Notes: generated by a model not told the origin, from the sequence alone. A stretch of 64,000 nucleotides of DNA from Octopus sinensis (GCF_006345805.1 NC_043005.1:61628001-61692000), one strand, 5' to 3'; shown: positions 26,656-54,264, numbered from the stretch's first letter. Translations and numbers: made by a program.

Positions 26656-26700
26656 AATTTTCGAAAAGAAACTCTATCTATGACAGGGCGAGTGAAAACA
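26656..26700 (+). CDS. nAChR-like 45-nt internal exon, [15 protein letters not shown] (beta1-beta2, loop D region)
   Basis: ttttcag acceptor, gtaagt donor, exactly 45 nt, phase 0/0. Aligns with alpha7 DEKNQVLTTNIWLQM and joins in frame to KWND of the next exon. Not in the ORF track (too short). Confidence 0.82.
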
Positions 26701-53700: not shown

Positions 53701-54264
53701 TCTCTCTCTGTTTTTTTTTTCTCACTTTCATTTCTATCTATTGCAGCGGTATACCTGGTTACGGTAATGATTATCAGTGCACTCACCTGTGTCATGACAA
53801 TCCTTGTAATCAGAGTGTACCATCGGAACGATCACGAGTGTCCTATACCTTTGTGGTTGCAGAAATTTGTCGGCAGCTTTGCACCTCTTCTGTCCGGAAG
53901 TAGCAGTGGCATCATTGTGAGCCAACACAGTTCCCCTGAGCACGTAGCCGAAACTGGTTGGAGCCGAACTAACACCGCTGACGATATACACGAACGACTG
54001 GAATGCTGGGGAGAAGAGCCGGGAGCTCGAGACTTTGCGAATCGACGCCGTGGCGAATCTCGTGTGTTCCAGACAACGCGTATGAGCATGAGGCGCAAGA
54101 AGTCACTTAAACAGGATTGTATCCGCGATGGCGACCAAACTCGCCGTCCGAATTCATGGAAGAATGTGGCGCGTGCTATTGATAGATTTTGTTTCCGGTT
54201 AACACTTTTCATTGTTCTTCTCACTAACCTAATGATGATGATTGTTCTCGGTGCTTTCAGTTGA
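26656..54264 (+). CDS. 5'-partial multi-exon gene: divergent non-alpha nicotinic acetylcholine receptor-like (Cys-loop) subunit; join(26656..26700,38521..38630,47298..47827,53747..54264)
   Basis: Four exons with AG/GT boundaries splice in frame (phases 0,0,2,1): 1203 nt = 400 aa + TGA. The product has WxDxxLxW, WxPxI, a Cys-loop ([15 protein letters not shown]), M1-M3, an intracellular loop and M4. The 45-nt and 110-nt exon sizes match the conserved nAChR gene structure. Introns are 11820, 8667 and 5919 bp. Confidence 0.92.
27674..27910 (+). mobile_element. tRNA-derived SINE family B, full length with 18-bp TSD
   Basis: GGCGGCGAGCTGGCGGAATCG head, GTTCAAATTCC B-box. Flanked by TTACTTTCACTGCATGAA (27656-73) and TTACTTTTACTGCATGAA (27911-28). 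Confidence 0.88.
30770..30950 (-). mobile_element. SINE family B copy, antisense
   Basis: Ends GCCAGCTCGCTGCC, the reverse complement of the family head. Confidence 0.7.
32150..32560 (+). mobile_element. possible decayed Penelope-like RT C-terminal remnant
   Basis: [20 protein letters not shown] resembles the KRNIPYNLARRICTIV region of PLE RTs; weak. Confidence 0.25.
34050..35700 (-). mobile_element. heavily decayed Penelope-like element (RT C-terminus + GIY-YIG remnant)
   Basis: Minus-strand translation with many stops resembles PLE motifs: [21 protein letters not shown] (DQYL..SxHP-like), [10 protein letters not shown] (CxSxNLIY-like). Boundaries approximate. Confidence 0.4.
37785..38425. 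mobile_element. cluster of SINE family B copies (-, -, +) immediately upstream of the 110-nt exon
   Basis: Antisense copies at ~37785-37975 and ~37994-38175; sense copy at 38204-38425. Confidence 0.75.
38521..38630 (+). CDS. nAChR-like 110-nt exon, [36 protein letters not shown] (loop A region)
   Basis: Polypyrimidine tract + ttgtag acceptor, gtaagt donor, 110 nt, phase 0/2. Carries the W-x-D-x-x-L-x-W and W-x-P-x-I motifs. Confidence 0.93.
38960..39660 (-). mobile_element. retrozyme-like element 2 (decayed tandem dimer, 350-bp period)
   Basis: Direct repeat TTCGCTCCCTT.CTCAC.ATATATC...GTGGCAAAAA at 39197 and 39547 (350 bp apart). Inverted repeat 39015-39035 / 39128-39146 encloses the hammerhead. 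Confidence 0.5.
39040..39102 (-). ncRNA. type I hammerhead ribozyme fold (U3-A8 core, degenerate cleavage site) in retrozyme-like element 2
   Basis: Minus strand reads UUCUAC-UUGAUAA-GGGG(CAAAUA)CUCU-GAAA-CUAGUCUG(UAGAUGC)CAGACCAG-CA-AGGGGAA. Stem III pairs 7 of 8; the triplet reads GCA instead of GUH; stem I is imperfect. Confidence 0.55.
39861..40280 (-). mobile_element. two tandem antisense SINE family B copies
   Basis: Reverse complement of 27674-27910, repeated twice. Confidence 0.85.
40981..41310 (+). mobile_element. tRNA-derived SINE family C
   Basis: TGGCTCAGTGG A-box, GTTCGAATCCC B-box, GTGTTCTTGAGCAAGAC domain; second copy at 50836-51110. Confidence 0.8.
42712..43047 (-). mobile_element. 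SINE family A copy, antisense, decayed
   Basis: Reverse-complement similarity to 12061-12482. Confidence 0.7.
43258..43822. repeat. compound (TAGA)n/(CAGA)n/(GGCA)n tetranucleotide array
   Basis: Direct reading. Similar arrays at 2563-2718, 9170-9277, 11499-11808, 29826-29915, 38751-38830 and 48160-48296. Confidence 0.95.
44035..44430 (+). mobile_element. SINE family A copy
   Basis: Near-identical to 12061-12482 over about 400 bp. Confidence 0.85.
45285..45415. repeat. dispersed repeat, second copy at ~50555-50690
   Basis: AAAAGAAATC.CA.AAAATTGGTCTTT.GTGTGTCAT.TGAATATATTA...CCGTTTTTAC.CAAA.GCT.TCTTTTGATGTA appears twice in the same orientation. Confidence 0.7.
45660..46185 (-). mobile_element. 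two antisense SINE family B copies
   Basis: GGAATTTGAACTCAG...GCTTGCCGCC reverse-complement heads at ~45890 and ~46185. Confidence 0.75.
46560..47200 (-). mobile_element. possible decayed hAT transposase C-terminal (dimerisation) remnant
   Basis: Minus strand [16 protein letters not shown] resembles the L..P.S.A..ER.FS motif of hAT transposases; multiple stops. Confidence 0.33.
47298..47827 (+). CDS. nAChR-like 530-nt exon: loop E, Cys-loop, loops B/F/C, M1, M2, M2-M3 linker
   Basis: Lies within ORF 47281..47835. gtttcag acceptor, G|gtaagt donor. Encodes [44 protein letters not shown] and [31 protein letters not shown]. Confidence 0.96.
48975..49292 (-). mobile_element. SINE family A copy, antisense, decayed
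   Basis: Reverse-complement similarity (TTTCTTTCAGTTTCCGTCTAC...GGGACTGAATCCGGAACC). Confidence 0.7.
50240..50490 (-). mobile_element. tRNA-derived SINE, antisense
   Basis: Minus strand GTGGAAGCGCAATGGCCCAGTGGTTAGGGCAGCGG...GGTTTCGATTCCC head; related tail at ~51180-51330. Confidence 0.7.
50836..51110 (+). mobile_element. SINE family C copy
   Basis: Aligns to 40981-41310 with an internal deletion. Confidence 0.75.
53056..53565. mobile_element. Tc1/mariner-superfamily MITE, 510 bp, TA target-site duplication
   Basis: TIRs CCGTAAATCCTCGAGTATAATCCGC / GCAGACTATACTCATGGATTTACGG (21 of 25 match), TA on both sides (53054-55, 53566-67), no ORF. Confidence 0.85.
53747..54264 (+). CDS. nAChR-like terminal exon: M3, intracellular loop, M4, stop
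   Basis: Long pyrimidine tract + ttgcag acceptor, phase 1 continues the frame ([27 protein letters not shown]...PIPLWLQKF...[36 protein letters not shown]). Confidence 0.95.

What the first reader, a model, noticed from the sequence alone, without database searches (positions are those of the whole stretch)
26656..54264. Orphan nAChR-like subunit with a rebuilt ligand pocket: candidate non-cholinergic or chemosensory receptor
Versus alpha7: loop D Trp is Arg (TGRVKT), loop A Tyr is Asp (WSPEIIIDN), loop C lacks the vicinal Cys-Cys and is 5 residues shorter (QPKQYGAEY), the loop E region has a 3-residue insertion, and the near-invariant W-x-P-P is WDVS. Loop B Trp (GEWTY) and the distal loop C Tyr remain. 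The frame and splice sites are intact, suggesting function. Octopus chemotactile receptors are known nAChR derivatives that lost ACh-binding residues. This gene shows the same kind of loss while keeping ancestral 45/110-nt exons, so it may be a relative or an independent divergent lineage. A structural non-alpha subunit role is also possible.
Basis: partly seen in the sequence, partly recalled or inferred. Interest (0 to 1): 0.75.

Follow-up and report, generated by a model that had tools for sequence, protein, structure and literature searches.

The report
Conserved octopus non-alpha nicotinic-receptor-like subunit
This is the 3' part of a real, already annotated octopus gene for a nicotinic-receptor-family channel subunit that has lost key acetylcholine-binding residues; it has been kept almost unchanged across cephalopods and does not look like one of the octopus 'taste-by-touch' receptors.

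Summary
Four clean AG/GT exons (26656-26700, 38521-38630, 47298-47827, 53747-54264) encode residues 76-475 of Octopus sinensis XP_029640911.2, named 'neuronal acetylcholine receptor subunit alpha-3-like'. Exons 1-2 lie upstream of the window.

However, the loop A Tyr->Asp change and the missing Cys-Cys are typical of the nearest molluscan relatives. Only the loop D Trp->Arg and a Glu before the loop B Trp are specific to this cephalopod lineage.

Constraint is very strong: 94% identity between Octopus and Argonauta, 72% to a spliced transcript from a more distant cephalopod, and dN/dS 0.047. The exon structure is conserved and there is one copy in the window.

It fails four defining features of chemotactile receptors: they are intronless, tandemly arrayed, diversifying, and have a hydrophobic pocket. 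No solved chemotactile receptor ranks among its best PDB matches. Loop C is the least conserved part of the ligand-binding domain.

Best reading (confidence about 0.45): a non-alpha, probably accessory subunit of heteromeric cation channels. Main rival (about 0.3): a receptor for a polar or charged non-cholinergic ligand. I could not make a direct tree with chemotactile receptor sequences.

The parts
1..26655 (+). 3' part of the long intron upstream of the 45-nt exon. Exons 1-2 (residues 1-75) lie outside the window.
   Evidence: No 6-mer of residues 1-75 of P0002 is encoded anywhere in the window, and tblastn finds nothing. The annotated gene spans about 155 kb. The stretch contains LINE RT and mariner HTH fragments.
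26656..26700 (+). Exon of 45 nt ([15 protein letters not shown]): beta1-beta2 loop and loop D. The Arg87 codon at 26689-26691 replaces the loop D Trp.
   Evidence: AG/GT borders. Identical to P0002 residues 76-90. Aligned to alpha3 NLWLKQ. The same 45-nt exon, with the Arg, is present in L001.
26701..38520 (+). Intron, 11.8 kb
   Evidence: Lies between the GT at 26701 and the AG at 38519-38520.
38521..38630 (+). Exon of 110 nt ([36 protein letters not shown] + 2 nt): loop A. The Asp125 codon at 38623-38625 replaces the loop A Tyr.
   Evidence: AG/GT borders. P0002 residues 91-127. Alpha3 alignment. The same 110-nt exon is present in L001.
38631..47297 (+). Intron, 8.7 kb
   Evidence: Splice sites seen.
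47298..47827 (+). Exon of 530 nt, containing: the 3-residue insertion; loop E (H152-W153-D154, WDVS 47374-47385); Cys-loop 47404-47448; loop B GEWTY 47461-47475; loop F; loop C tip QPKQYGAEY 47572-47598; M1 47638-47712; M2 with the GER ring and 9' Leu 47713-47808.
   Evidence: Pfam LBD and TM domains. 100% identical to P0002 residues 128-303. Best PDB match is alpha3 at E 2.4e-34. The homologous exon in L001 has the same junctions.
47828..53746 (+). Intron, 5.9 kb, in the M2-M3 linker (phase 1, inside the Ala304 codon)
   Evidence: GTAAGT donor and TTGCAG acceptor. The frame is restored across the junction.
53747..54264 (+). Terminal coding exon: M3 53749-53829, short intracellular domain 53830-54153, MA helix and M4 54154-54261, stop TGA 54262-54264.
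   Evidence: Identical to P0002 residues 305-475. The AF2 model shows M3 and MA-M4 helices with pLDDT above 90 and a disordered ICD at residues 355-437.
60342..60490 (+). Possible alternative 3' exon, matching the C-terminus of O. vulgaris isoform CAI9729183.1. It would replace MA and M4. Its use in this genome is doubtful.
   Evidence: tblastn gives 96% identity over 49 aa. It is preceded by AC rather than AG, and the internal GT donor would be at 54119.

Best explanation
The feature is the 3' third of a single-copy, intron-rich gene for a non-alpha subunit of the nicotinic-type (cation-selective) branch of pentameric ligand-gated channels. The subunit has been conserved across cephalopods.

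Shown here:
- The channel and gating hardware is intact: Cys-loop, pre-M1 Arg, M2 with -1' Glu and 9' Leu, the PSTS M2-M3 linker, and four TM helices.
- The orthosteric site is no longer a cholinergic aromatic box on either face. On the principal face, loop A Tyr is Asp, there is no Cys-Cys, and loop C is short and evolutionarily labile. On the complementary face, loop D Trp is Arg, and His and Asp flank the loop E Trp.

Inferred: the protein most likely co-assembles with canonical alpha-type octopus nAChR subunits as an accessory (structural, 'fifth-position') subunit. In that role it would shape assembly, conductance, desensitisation or localisation of an ACh-gated cation channel without forming an ACh site itself, as vertebrate beta1, beta3 and alpha5 do. 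Its well conserved intracellular loop would then serve trafficking or anchoring.
For: 1. Family and integrity. Pfam LBD and TM domains. The best PDB sequence hits are alpha3, alpha4, alpha1 and beta2 at E 1e-52 to 1e-49. The best 50 fold matches are all nAChR chains. The AF2 model has pLDDT of about 90 over the LBD and TMD. The M2 sequence [19 protein letters not shown] carries the cation-type GE(K/R) ring (motif meaning from PMC13174522).
2. Non-alpha status. No vicinal Cys, and loop A is Asp. The closest relatives, bivalve proteins at 35-46% identity, share '(I/V)DN' and also lack Cys-Cys.
3. Function under strong constraint. 94% identity between Octopus and Argonauta, with an almost identical LBD. 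72% identity to a full-length spliced transcript found in two RNA runs. pN 0.15 against a saturated pS of 0.82. dN/dS 0.047 between two non-octopod sequences. Conserved exon junctions.
4. The principal face is unlikely to cap an agonist. The loop C tip is 4/11 identical with a 2-residue indel, the lowest value in the LBD. Loop D is 10/11, loop A 9/10 and M1 24/25.
5. The complementary face lacks the Trp that every ACh-binding interface uses.
6. The ICD is 69% conserved and MA-M4 is 33/36, as expected if intracellular partners matter.
Against: - No partner subunit, expression site or current has been shown. The accessory role is an inference.
- The lineage-specific pocket residues (Arg87, Glu183, Asp154) are invariant across the orthologs found. 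A purely structural site does not require that, although beta2-strand packing could explain it.
- Loop B keeps the alpha-like Gly two residues before the Trp (LGEW). That Gly is associated with a binding-competent Trp (bioRxiv 10.1101/2025.10.31.685654).
- As far as I recall (not checked here), vertebrate accessory subunits usually still carry the loop D Trp, so the analogy is imperfect.
- Whether the subunit can form homomers is untested.
Confidence: 0.45

Rival explanations
1. It is the ligand-binding subunit of a receptor for a transmitter other than ACh. The aromatic box would have been converted into a polar, charged pocket: Arg87 and Lys89 on strand beta2, His152 and Asp154 in loop E, Asp125 in loop A, Glu183-Trp184-Tyr186 in loop B, and Tyr227 in loop C. 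Such a pocket would bind a small polar, zwitterionic or anionic molecule and gate a cation channel, either as a homomer or with its complementary face paired to an alpha-type partner.
For: - Arg at the loop D Trp position and Glu before the loop B Trp occur only in this ortholog group (6 of 107 sequences, all of them orthologs). They are invariant in the orthologs found.
- Loop D (10/11) and loop A (9/10) are conserved above the LBD mean of 72%.
- The alpha-like Gly two residues before the Trp is retained (meaning from bioRxiv 10.1101/2025.10.31.685654).
- There is precedent that nAChR-family channels change ligand: DopC1 and AChRB1 in octopus (bioRxiv 10.1101/2025.04.02.646353).
- A basic residue on strand beta2 binds the carboxylate in amino-acid-gated pLGICs. 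This is established knowledge recalled from memory, not tested here.
Against: - The loop C tip, which closes over agonists in all characterised pLGICs, is the least conserved LBD segment and differs in length between lineages.
- No candidate ligand is indicated.
- Strand beta2 and loop A conservation can be structural.
- Orphan lophotrochozoan subunits such as Alpo4 have resisted deorphanisation (PMC10338036).
Confidence: 0.3
2. It is a canonical complementary (beta/gamma/delta-like) subunit that still forms ACh sites at its minus face with an alpha partner. The odd residues would only tune affinity.
For: - The closest relatives look like ordinary non-alpha subunits that retain the loop D Trp.
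- Overall similarity to beta2 and beta4 and to the muscle non-alpha chains is as high as to alpha chains.
Against: - The loop D Trp, which is part of the aromatic box, is replaced by a cationic Arg.
- The loop E positions flanking the conserved Trp are His and Asp rather than hydrophobic.
- A positive charge there should oppose binding of a quaternary ammonium. This is an inference from established nAChR pharmacology.
Confidence: 0.1
3. It is a chemosensory receptor related to the cephalopod chemotactile receptors, either a member of the CR family or of the intron-bearing 'CR-like' or parental lineage. It would be used in suckers for contact chemosensation.
For: - Like CRs, it lacks ACh-binding residues and the Cys-Cys.
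- A 'CR-like' clade with members in bivalves, gastropods and chitons (PMC13174522), and a cephalopod group sister to CRs (bioRxiv 10.1101/2025.06.15.659772), have been reported. I could not test membership of either because no CR sequence was retrievable.
Against: - It is intron-rich with ancestral junctions.
- There is no tandem copy in 64 kb.
- Orthologs at 94% and 72% identity and dN/dS 0.047 contrast with the expansion and diversifying selection reported for CRs (PMC11526382).
- The pocket is charged, not hydrophobic (CRT1 pocket Y58/W122/F124/F192 in bioRxiv 10.1101/2025.03.03.641191).
- No chemotactile receptor appears in the best 60 PDB sequence hits for the protein, for a molluscan profile or for two relatives, nor in the best 50 fold hits.
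Confidence: 0.07
4. It is a decaying or non-functional gene copy.
For: The canonical ACh-binding residues are lost.
Against: - The reading frame and splice sites are intact.
- dN/dS is 0.047.
- Near-identity across octopods.
- Spliced full-length transcripts of the ortholog occur in two runs.
Confidence: 0.01

Closest known systems
Molluscan non-alpha nAChR-like subunits of the expanded lophotrochozoan repertoire, e.g. Pecten maximus XP_033728350.1, Argopecten irradians XP_069108504.1 and Solemya velum KAL5006059.1 (the '(I/V)DN' group)
   Same: They are the nearest non-orthologous sequences: 41-46% identity over the large exon and 35-36% over conserved columns. They share loop A Asp, no vicinal Cys, an SGEK/AGER cation-type M2, and loop B Trp.
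   Different: - They keep the loop D Trp (or Phe/Tyr), mostly W-E-P-P, and Ser/Thr before the loop B Trp. This gene has Arg, WDVS and Glu.
- According to the literature many of the expanded genes are intronless or tandem (PMC6896357). This gene is intron-rich, and the window holds no second copy.
- The grouping has only about 34% bootstrap support.
Vertebrate accessory or structural nAChR subunits (muscle beta1; neuronal beta3 and alpha5)
   Same: The proposed way of working is the same: a subunit with an intact pore and gating elements that occupies a position contributing no agonist site and modulates an ACh-gated heteropentamer. Overall sequence and fold similarity to nAChR chains is the highest in the PDB.
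   Different: - Identity is only 22-33%, with no orthology.
- To my knowledge (memory, not tested) the vertebrate accessory subunits keep the loop D Trp.
- Co-assembly is not shown here.
Cephalopod chemotactile receptors (CRT1/CR518, CR840, squid CRB1)
   Same: Both are cephalopod nAChR-family cation channel subunits that lost the ACh-binding residues and the vicinal Cys.
   Different: - CRs are intronless, tandemly expanded (26 in O. bimaculoides), have hydrophobic aromatic pockets under diversifying selection, and work in suckers (PMC11526382, PMC13174522, bioRxiv 10.1101/2025.03.03.641191).
- This gene has long introns and no second copy in the window. It is under strong purifying selection and has a charged pocket.
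- No solved CR ranks among its best PDB matches.
Alpo4 (Alvinella pompejana), an orphan lophotrochozoan nAChR-like receptor
   Same: It is a lophotrochozoan nAChR-like subunit without the Cys-Cys tip, phylogenetically isolated, with no known agonist (PMC10338036).
   Different: - Alpo4 keeps the full aromatic set: F103, W159, Y199, Y205 and the loop D W65. This protein has Asp in loop A and Arg in loop D.
- Alpo4 forms homopentamers. Assembly of this protein is unknown.
Octopus DopC1 (dopamine-gated cation channel) and AChRB1 (ACh-gated anion channel)
   Same: Both are examples of octopus nAChR-branch channels that departed from classical cholinergic excitation (bioRxiv 10.1101/2025.04.02.646353).
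   Different: - DopC channels retain YxCC and the aromatic cage (bioRxiv 10.1101/2025.10.31.685654).
- AChRB-type channels are anion-selective with PAR-type M2 motifs (PMC13174522).
- This protein lacks YxCC and has a GER cation-type M2.

Membership tests
Pentameric ligand-gated ion channels, nicotinic-type cation branch | Neur_chan_LBD plus Neur_chan_memb domains, with four TM helices | tested here: met
   Pfam E-values of 1.3e-21 and 6e-14 on the large exon alone. The AF2 model shows a beta-sandwich plus M1-M4 helices at pLDDT of about 90.
Pentameric ligand-gated ion channels, nicotinic-type cation branch | Cys-loop: two Cys separated by 13 residues, with the (F/Y)PFD core | tested here: met
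   C163[14 protein letters not shown]177, encoded at 47404-47448. Both Cys are invariant in alignments A3 and A4.
Pentameric ligand-gated ion channels, nicotinic-type cation branch | Cation-type M2: Glu at -1' (GEK/GER), no Pro-Ala-Arg motif, Leu at 9' | tested here: met
   The sequence reads [19 protein letters not shown]. The meaning of the motif is taken from PMC13174522. Ion selectivity itself was not measured.
Pentameric ligand-gated ion channels, nicotinic-type cation branch | Closest solved relatives are nAChR subunits | tested here: met
   alpha3 at 4.9e-52, followed by alpha4, alpha1, beta2 and alpha6. The Foldseek top 50 are all nAChR chains.
Alpha-type (agonist-binding principal) nAChR subunit, as implied by the RefSeq name 'alpha-3-like' | Vicinal Cys-Cys at the tip of loop C (YxCC) | tested here: not met
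   Loop C reads QPKQYGAEY, with Gly-Ala where alpha3 and alpha4 have Cys-Cys.
Alpha-type (agonist-binding principal) nAChR subunit, as implied by the RefSeq name 'alpha-3-like' | Principal-face aromatic residues: loop A Tyr, loop B Trp, two loop C Tyr | tested here: not met
   Loop A Tyr is Asp125. Loop B Trp184 and the distal Tyr227 are kept. The proximal Tyr is present only in octopods.
ACh-binding complementary non-alpha subunit (beta2/beta4/gamma/delta/epsilon type) | Loop D Trp on strand beta2, facing the agonist | tested here: not met
   Arg87 aligns with the Trp of alpha3 and alpha4. Arg at this column occurs only in the 6 orthologs among 107 relatives.
Cephalopod chemotactile receptors (CRs) | Intronless gene (retroposed origin) | tested here: not met
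   There are three introns of 5.9-11.8 kb inside the window, plus more than 26 kb of upstream intron. The same junctions occur in L001. The criterion comes from PMC11526382 and PMC13174522.
Cephalopod chemotactile receptors (CRs) | Tandem arrays and lineage-specific expansion | tested here: not met
   tblastn with 15 diverse family members finds only this gene's exons in 64 kb. One ortholog was found per species examined. The test is limited to this window.
Cephalopod chemotactile receptors (CRs) | Binding pocket under diversifying selection | tested here: not met
   dN/dS is 0.047 over exons 3-5. Pocket residues are identical between Octopus and Argonauta. Loop D is 10/11 and loop A 9/10 identical to the 72% ortholog.
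Cephalopod chemotactile receptors (CRs) | Exceptionally hydrophobic, aromatic orthosteric pocket (CRT1 Y58, W122, F124, F192) | tested here: not met
   The pocket positions here are Arg87, Lys89, His152, Asp154, Asp125 and Glu183. The correspondence to CRT1 residues was inferred from loop position and numbering, not from an alignment with CRT1.
Cephalopod chemotactile receptors (CRs) | Phylogenetic placement inside the CR clade (or the 'CR-like' clade) | tested here: inconclusive
   No CR sequence could be retrieved. Indirectly, no chemotactile receptor appears in the best 60 PDB hits of P0002, profile A3, P0042 or P0183, nor in the Foldseek top 50. Membership of the 'CR-like' clade is untested.
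Cephalopod chemotactile receptors (CRs) | Expression in sucker sensory cells; gating by poorly soluble molecules | not testable with these tools
   No expression atlas or electrophysiology is available here. The tissue of the two RNA runs that carry the ortholog could not be identified.
DopC dopamine-gated cation channels | Retained YxCC and aromatic cage; alpha9/alpha10-like | tested here: not met
   There is no YxCC, and the loop A Tyr and loop D Trp are absent. The criterion comes from bioRxiv 10.1101/2025.10.31.685654.
Retroposed, intron-poor expanded molluscan nAChR genes | 0-2 introns, often in tandem arrays | tested here: not met
   At least 4 introns are implied: 3 complete in the window plus the one upstream of the 45-nt exon. 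The criterion comes from PMC6896357.

The most novel reading that the evidence does not exclude
A cephalopod-wide pLGIC subunit, conserved since before the split of octopods from the lineage that carries the 72% ortholog, has had its cholinergic aromatic box replaced by a fixed set of charged residues: Arg and Lys on strand beta2, Asp in loop A, Glu next to the loop B Trp, and His and Asp in loop E. It would be the binding subunit of a so far unknown fast excitatory receptor for a polar, zwitterionic or anionic transmitter in cephalopod nervous tissue. That would be a third independent ligand switch in the octopus nicotinic branch, after DopC and AChRB.
Probability: 0.25. Interest if true: 0.7.

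Novelty: new member of a known kind. Interest (0 to 1): 0.35.

Why it matters
Octopus genomes carry dozens of nicotinic-like genes, and only a few have been given a function (classical nAChRs, chemotactile receptors, DopC, AChRB). This one is unusual because strong purifying selection across cephalopods is combined with a binding site that cannot be cholinergic on either face.

If it is an accessory subunit, it defines the composition of a native cephalopod nAChR. If it binds something else, it points to a new fast transmitter system.

It also shows that loss of ACh-binding residues alone is not a reliable marker of chemotactile-receptor kinship. Gene structure and the mode of selection separate the two. 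In addition, the automated name 'alpha-3-like' is misleading.

Tried and rejected
I used the large exon instead.
2. The first word-indexed homolog search with the exon found a single hit. That index is insensitive for this family.
3. Looking for exons 1-2 in the window by tblastn with word size 2 and by exact 6-mers found nothing. Octopus-Argonauta dN/dS could therefore not be computed.
4. Getting chemotactile receptor sequences failed:
   - The Allard 2023 and van Giesen 2020 papers are not held.
   - PDB sequence searches with the protein, a molluscan profile, an aromatic-pocket relative (P0042) and an intronless relative (P0183) never listed a CR.
   - Foldseek shows only 50 rows.
   - A generic profile would have been flooded by canonical nAChRs, and CRs share too few words with the available queries.
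5. Supplements: none are held for the MolluscaGenes preprint. Those of Courtney et al. hold only named receptors, HCR probes and an untrimmed alignment cut after about 40 sequences. This gene is not found in them.
6. The species and tissue of runs SRR23936168 and SRR29271457 and of assembly ERZ21867824 could not be identified. No paper cites them.
7. A 28-residue loop A query against the PDB returned nothing.
8. The NJ tree with bootstrap does not resolve the sister group: at most 34% support, for the bivalve '(I/V)DN' clade.
9. The intronless hits P0168 and P0183 come from other unidentified assemblies and are not CR-like.

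
Full report
**What is in the sequence.** Reading the DNA around them gives four exons with canonical AG...GT borders:
- 26656-26700 (45 nt)
- 38521-38630 (110 nt)
- 47298-47827 (530 nt)
- 53747-54264 (518 nt, ending in TGA)

Joined, they give an open 400-codon frame. It runs from the beta1-beta2 loop through loops D, A, E, the Cys-loop (C163-C177), loops B, F and C, then M1, M2, M3, a short intracellular domain and M4. 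The large exon alone matches Pfam Neur_chan_LBD (E 1.3e-21) and Neur_chan_memb (E 6e-14). The finding's coordinates are exactly the first base of the 45-nt exon and the last base of the stop codon.

**Identity of the gene.** An exhaustive HMMER search of 1.84 billion representatives returned a 475-aa protein that is 100% identical over the large exon (P0002). My spliced model equals its residues 76-475 exactly. It is Octopus sinensis XP_029640911.2, 'neuronal acetylcholine receptor subunit alpha-3-like'. Cluster mates at 90% identity or more come from O. bimaculoides (XP_052826972.1), O. vulgaris (CAI9729184.1) and Argonauta hians (GAB1602996.1). Residues 1-75 are not encoded anywhere in the window. 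The annotated gene spans about 155 kb, so the window holds its 3' third. The feature is therefore a known gene model, not an unannotated one, and its automated name is misleading because the protein lacks the alpha-defining Cys-Cys.

**Residue-level check.** HMMER alignments to human alpha3 and alpha4 and a MAFFT alignment of 107 relatives anchored on those two show:
- Arg87 at the loop D Trp, and Asp125 at the loop A Tyr.
- A 3-residue insertion before loop E, and W153-D-V-S in place of W-x-P-P.
- Trp184 and Tyr186 retained in loop B, preceded by Glu183 and by an alpha-like Gly182.
- A loop C with Gly-Ala where the Cys-Cys would be, 5 residues shorter than alpha3.
- The distal Tyr227 retained. 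In octopods a proximal Tyr223 may correspond to the second loop C Tyr.

The positions flanking the conserved loop E Trp face the pocket on the complementary side. They are His152 and Asp154.

**How unusual the pocket is.** It is less unusual than it looks against alpha7. In the 107 relatives, which are nearly all molluscan, only 13 have the loop A Tyr and about 11 have Cys-Cys. Asp is the commonest residue at the loop A position (21 sequences). The closest relatives all read '(I/V)DN' and lack Cys-Cys. These include Pecten, Argopecten, Solemya and Tegillarca proteins at 41-46% identity over the large exon. Those two 'losses' are therefore inherited features of a molluscan non-alpha group. This fits published reports of divergent molluscan nAChR clades with substituted binding residues (PMC13174522, PMC6896357). 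Three things are specific to this lineage: the loop D Arg, the Glu before the loop B Trp (each in 6 of 107 sequences, all of them orthologs), and the WDVS motif.

**Conservation and expression.**
- Octopus and Argonauta proteins are 94% identical. The LBD is nearly identical and every unusual motif is kept.
- A word-indexed search with the full protein found P0159, a 476-aa protein at 72% identity. It is encoded without interruption on 2.0-2.1-kb contigs from two sequencing runs.
- A genomic contig from a related organism (L001, 94% identical to P0159 over the large exon) carries the same gene split by introns at the same junctions: exons of 45, 110 and 536 nt, all AG/GT. The P0159 contigs are therefore spliced transcripts, which means the ortholog is expressed.
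- The taxon of these sequences could not be identified. From the identity level I infer a non-octopod cephalopod.
- Against octopus, synonymous sites are saturated (pS 0.82) while pN is 0.15. Between L001 and the transcript, dN/dS is 0.047 over 230 codons.
- The orthologs form a clade in 100/100 NJ bootstraps. Its sister group is unresolved, with at most 34% support for the '(I/V)DN' bivalve group.

**Relation to chemotactile receptors.** The literature describes CRs as intronless, tandemly expanded (26 in O. bimaculoides), with an exceptionally hydrophobic pocket. In CRT1 that pocket is Y58, W122, F124 and F192, and its residues are under diversifying selection (PMC11526382; PMC13174522; bioRxiv 10.1101/2025.03.03.641191). 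This gene fails each feature I could test:
- It has long introns at conserved positions.
- It is the only pLGIC gene in the 64-kb window.
- It has orthologs under strong purifying selection.
- Its pocket positions are charged or polar.

No chemotactile receptor appears among the best 60 PDB sequence matches of the protein, of a 34-sequence molluscan profile, or of two relatives. None appears among the best 50 Foldseek matches of a confident AF2 model either. All of those matches are nAChR or 5-HT3A chains.

I could not obtain CR sequences, so there is no explicit tree. Membership of the broader 'CR-like' clade or of a reported cephalopod group sister to CRs (bioRxiv 10.1101/2025.06.15.659772) is not excluded. 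I give it about 0.07.

**How it most likely works.** The pore and gating elements are canonical for a cation channel: a GER ring with Glu at -1', Leu at 9', a pre-M1 Arg, the Cys-loop YPFD core, and the PSTS M2-M3 linker. The AF2 model is confident over the LBD and TMD.

Region-by-region comparison with the 72% ortholog is the most informative evidence on the binding site:

| Region | Identity |
|---|---|
| Loop D | 10/11 |
| Loop A | 9/10 |
| Cys-loop | 13/15 |
| M1 | 24/25 |
| MA-M4 | 33/36 |
| Intracellular loop | 74/108 |
| Loop C tip | 4/11, plus a 2-residue length difference |
| LBD overall | 72% |

The loop C tip is the least conserved part of the LBD. In characterised pLGICs loop C closes over the agonist, so such drift argues that this subunit's principal face does not hold a ligand. 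Its complementary face has a cationic Arg where every ACh site has a Trp.

The simplest model is therefore a non-alpha subunit that assembles with alpha-type partners but contributes no ACh site. It would be an accessory subunit tuning assembly, gating or localisation. I hold this at about 0.45, and every step after 'intact cation-channel subunit without a cholinergic site' is inference.

**Main rival.** The lineage-specific charged residues (Arg87, Glu183, Asp154, with Asp125 and Lys89) are invariant across the orthologs, and loop B keeps the alpha-like Gly two residues before the Trp (bioRxiv 10.1101/2025.10.31.685654). That would fit a pocket rebuilt for a polar, zwitterionic or anionic ligand, perhaps at an interface with an alpha partner. 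Octopus already shows ligand and selectivity switches in this branch: DopC1 and AChRB1 (bioRxiv 10.1101/2025.04.02.646353). That study screened 41 octopus channels, but the supplements that are held do not show whether this gene was among them. I give this rival about 0.3. A still-cholinergic complementary role gets about 0.1, and pseudogene status about 0.01.

**Novelty and limits.** This is a new, functionally uncharacterised member of a known kind: divergent lophotrochozoan nAChR-family subunits. The gene model itself is public. What this work adds:
- Separation of clade-typical from lineage-specific substitutions.
- Evidence of deep purifying selection and a conserved gene structure.
- The loop-by-loop conservation pattern.
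- Rejection of CR membership on gene structure, copy number, mode of selection and pocket chemistry.

Limits:
- No CR sequences, so no direct phylogenetic test.
- The taxon and tissue of the transcript evidence are unknown.
- Pocket geometry was judged from alignments only.
- Assembly partners are unknown.

Noticed in passing
window 60342-60490 (+), with a possible internal donor at 54119: A sequence 96% identical to the alternative 49-aa C-terminus of O. vulgaris isoform CAI9729183.1 lies 6 kb downstream of the canonical stop. It would replace the MA helix and M4. In this genome it is preceded by AC rather than AG, so its use here is doubtful. The isoform may be an annotation artefact or species-specific.
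   Followed up: partly
window 19639-19935 (+) and 21059-21334 (+): Two transposon fragments sit inside the long upstream intron: a reverse-transcriptase piece (RVT_1, E 7e-7) followed by further ORF text up to 20453, and a Mos1/mariner HTH_48 piece (E 1.3e-18).
   Followed up: partly
window 6893-6934, 12108-12149, 44070-44111 (all - strand); degenerate copies near 8109-8381 and 49127-49465: A SINE-like dispersed repeat with the core CACTTGCCCAAGGTGCCACGCAGTGGGACTGAACCCGGAACC occurs 3 times with 3 mismatches or fewer, against 0 expected. It also appears repeatedly as similar ORF text in introns.
   Followed up: partly
whole window, e.g. 3656-4031, 9272-10015, 43188-44180, 47992-48369: Microsatellites and simple repeats are very dense (TA/TATG/GACA-type, read as 'YIYIYI', 'CMYV' and 'TDRQ' ORF text), and GC is low at 27-39%. 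This is typical of long octopus introns.
   Followed up: no
L004 10001-11161 and L005 10001-11110 (ENA assemblies ERZ25074796 and ERZ26696912): Two distant relatives (P0168, P0183) are full-length intronless nAChR-like ORFs on large contigs of unidentified organisms. L005 has LBD fragments 4-6 kb upstream, which suggests a tandem cluster of the retroposed type described for molluscs.
   Followed up: partly
window 53830-54153 (intracellular loop, residues 332-439): The intracellular loop is predicted to be disordered (pLDDT below 50), yet it is 69% identical to the 72% ortholog. Blocks such as [17 protein letters not shown] and LECWGEE are conserved, which hints at conserved phosphorylation or partner-binding motifs.
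   Followed up: no
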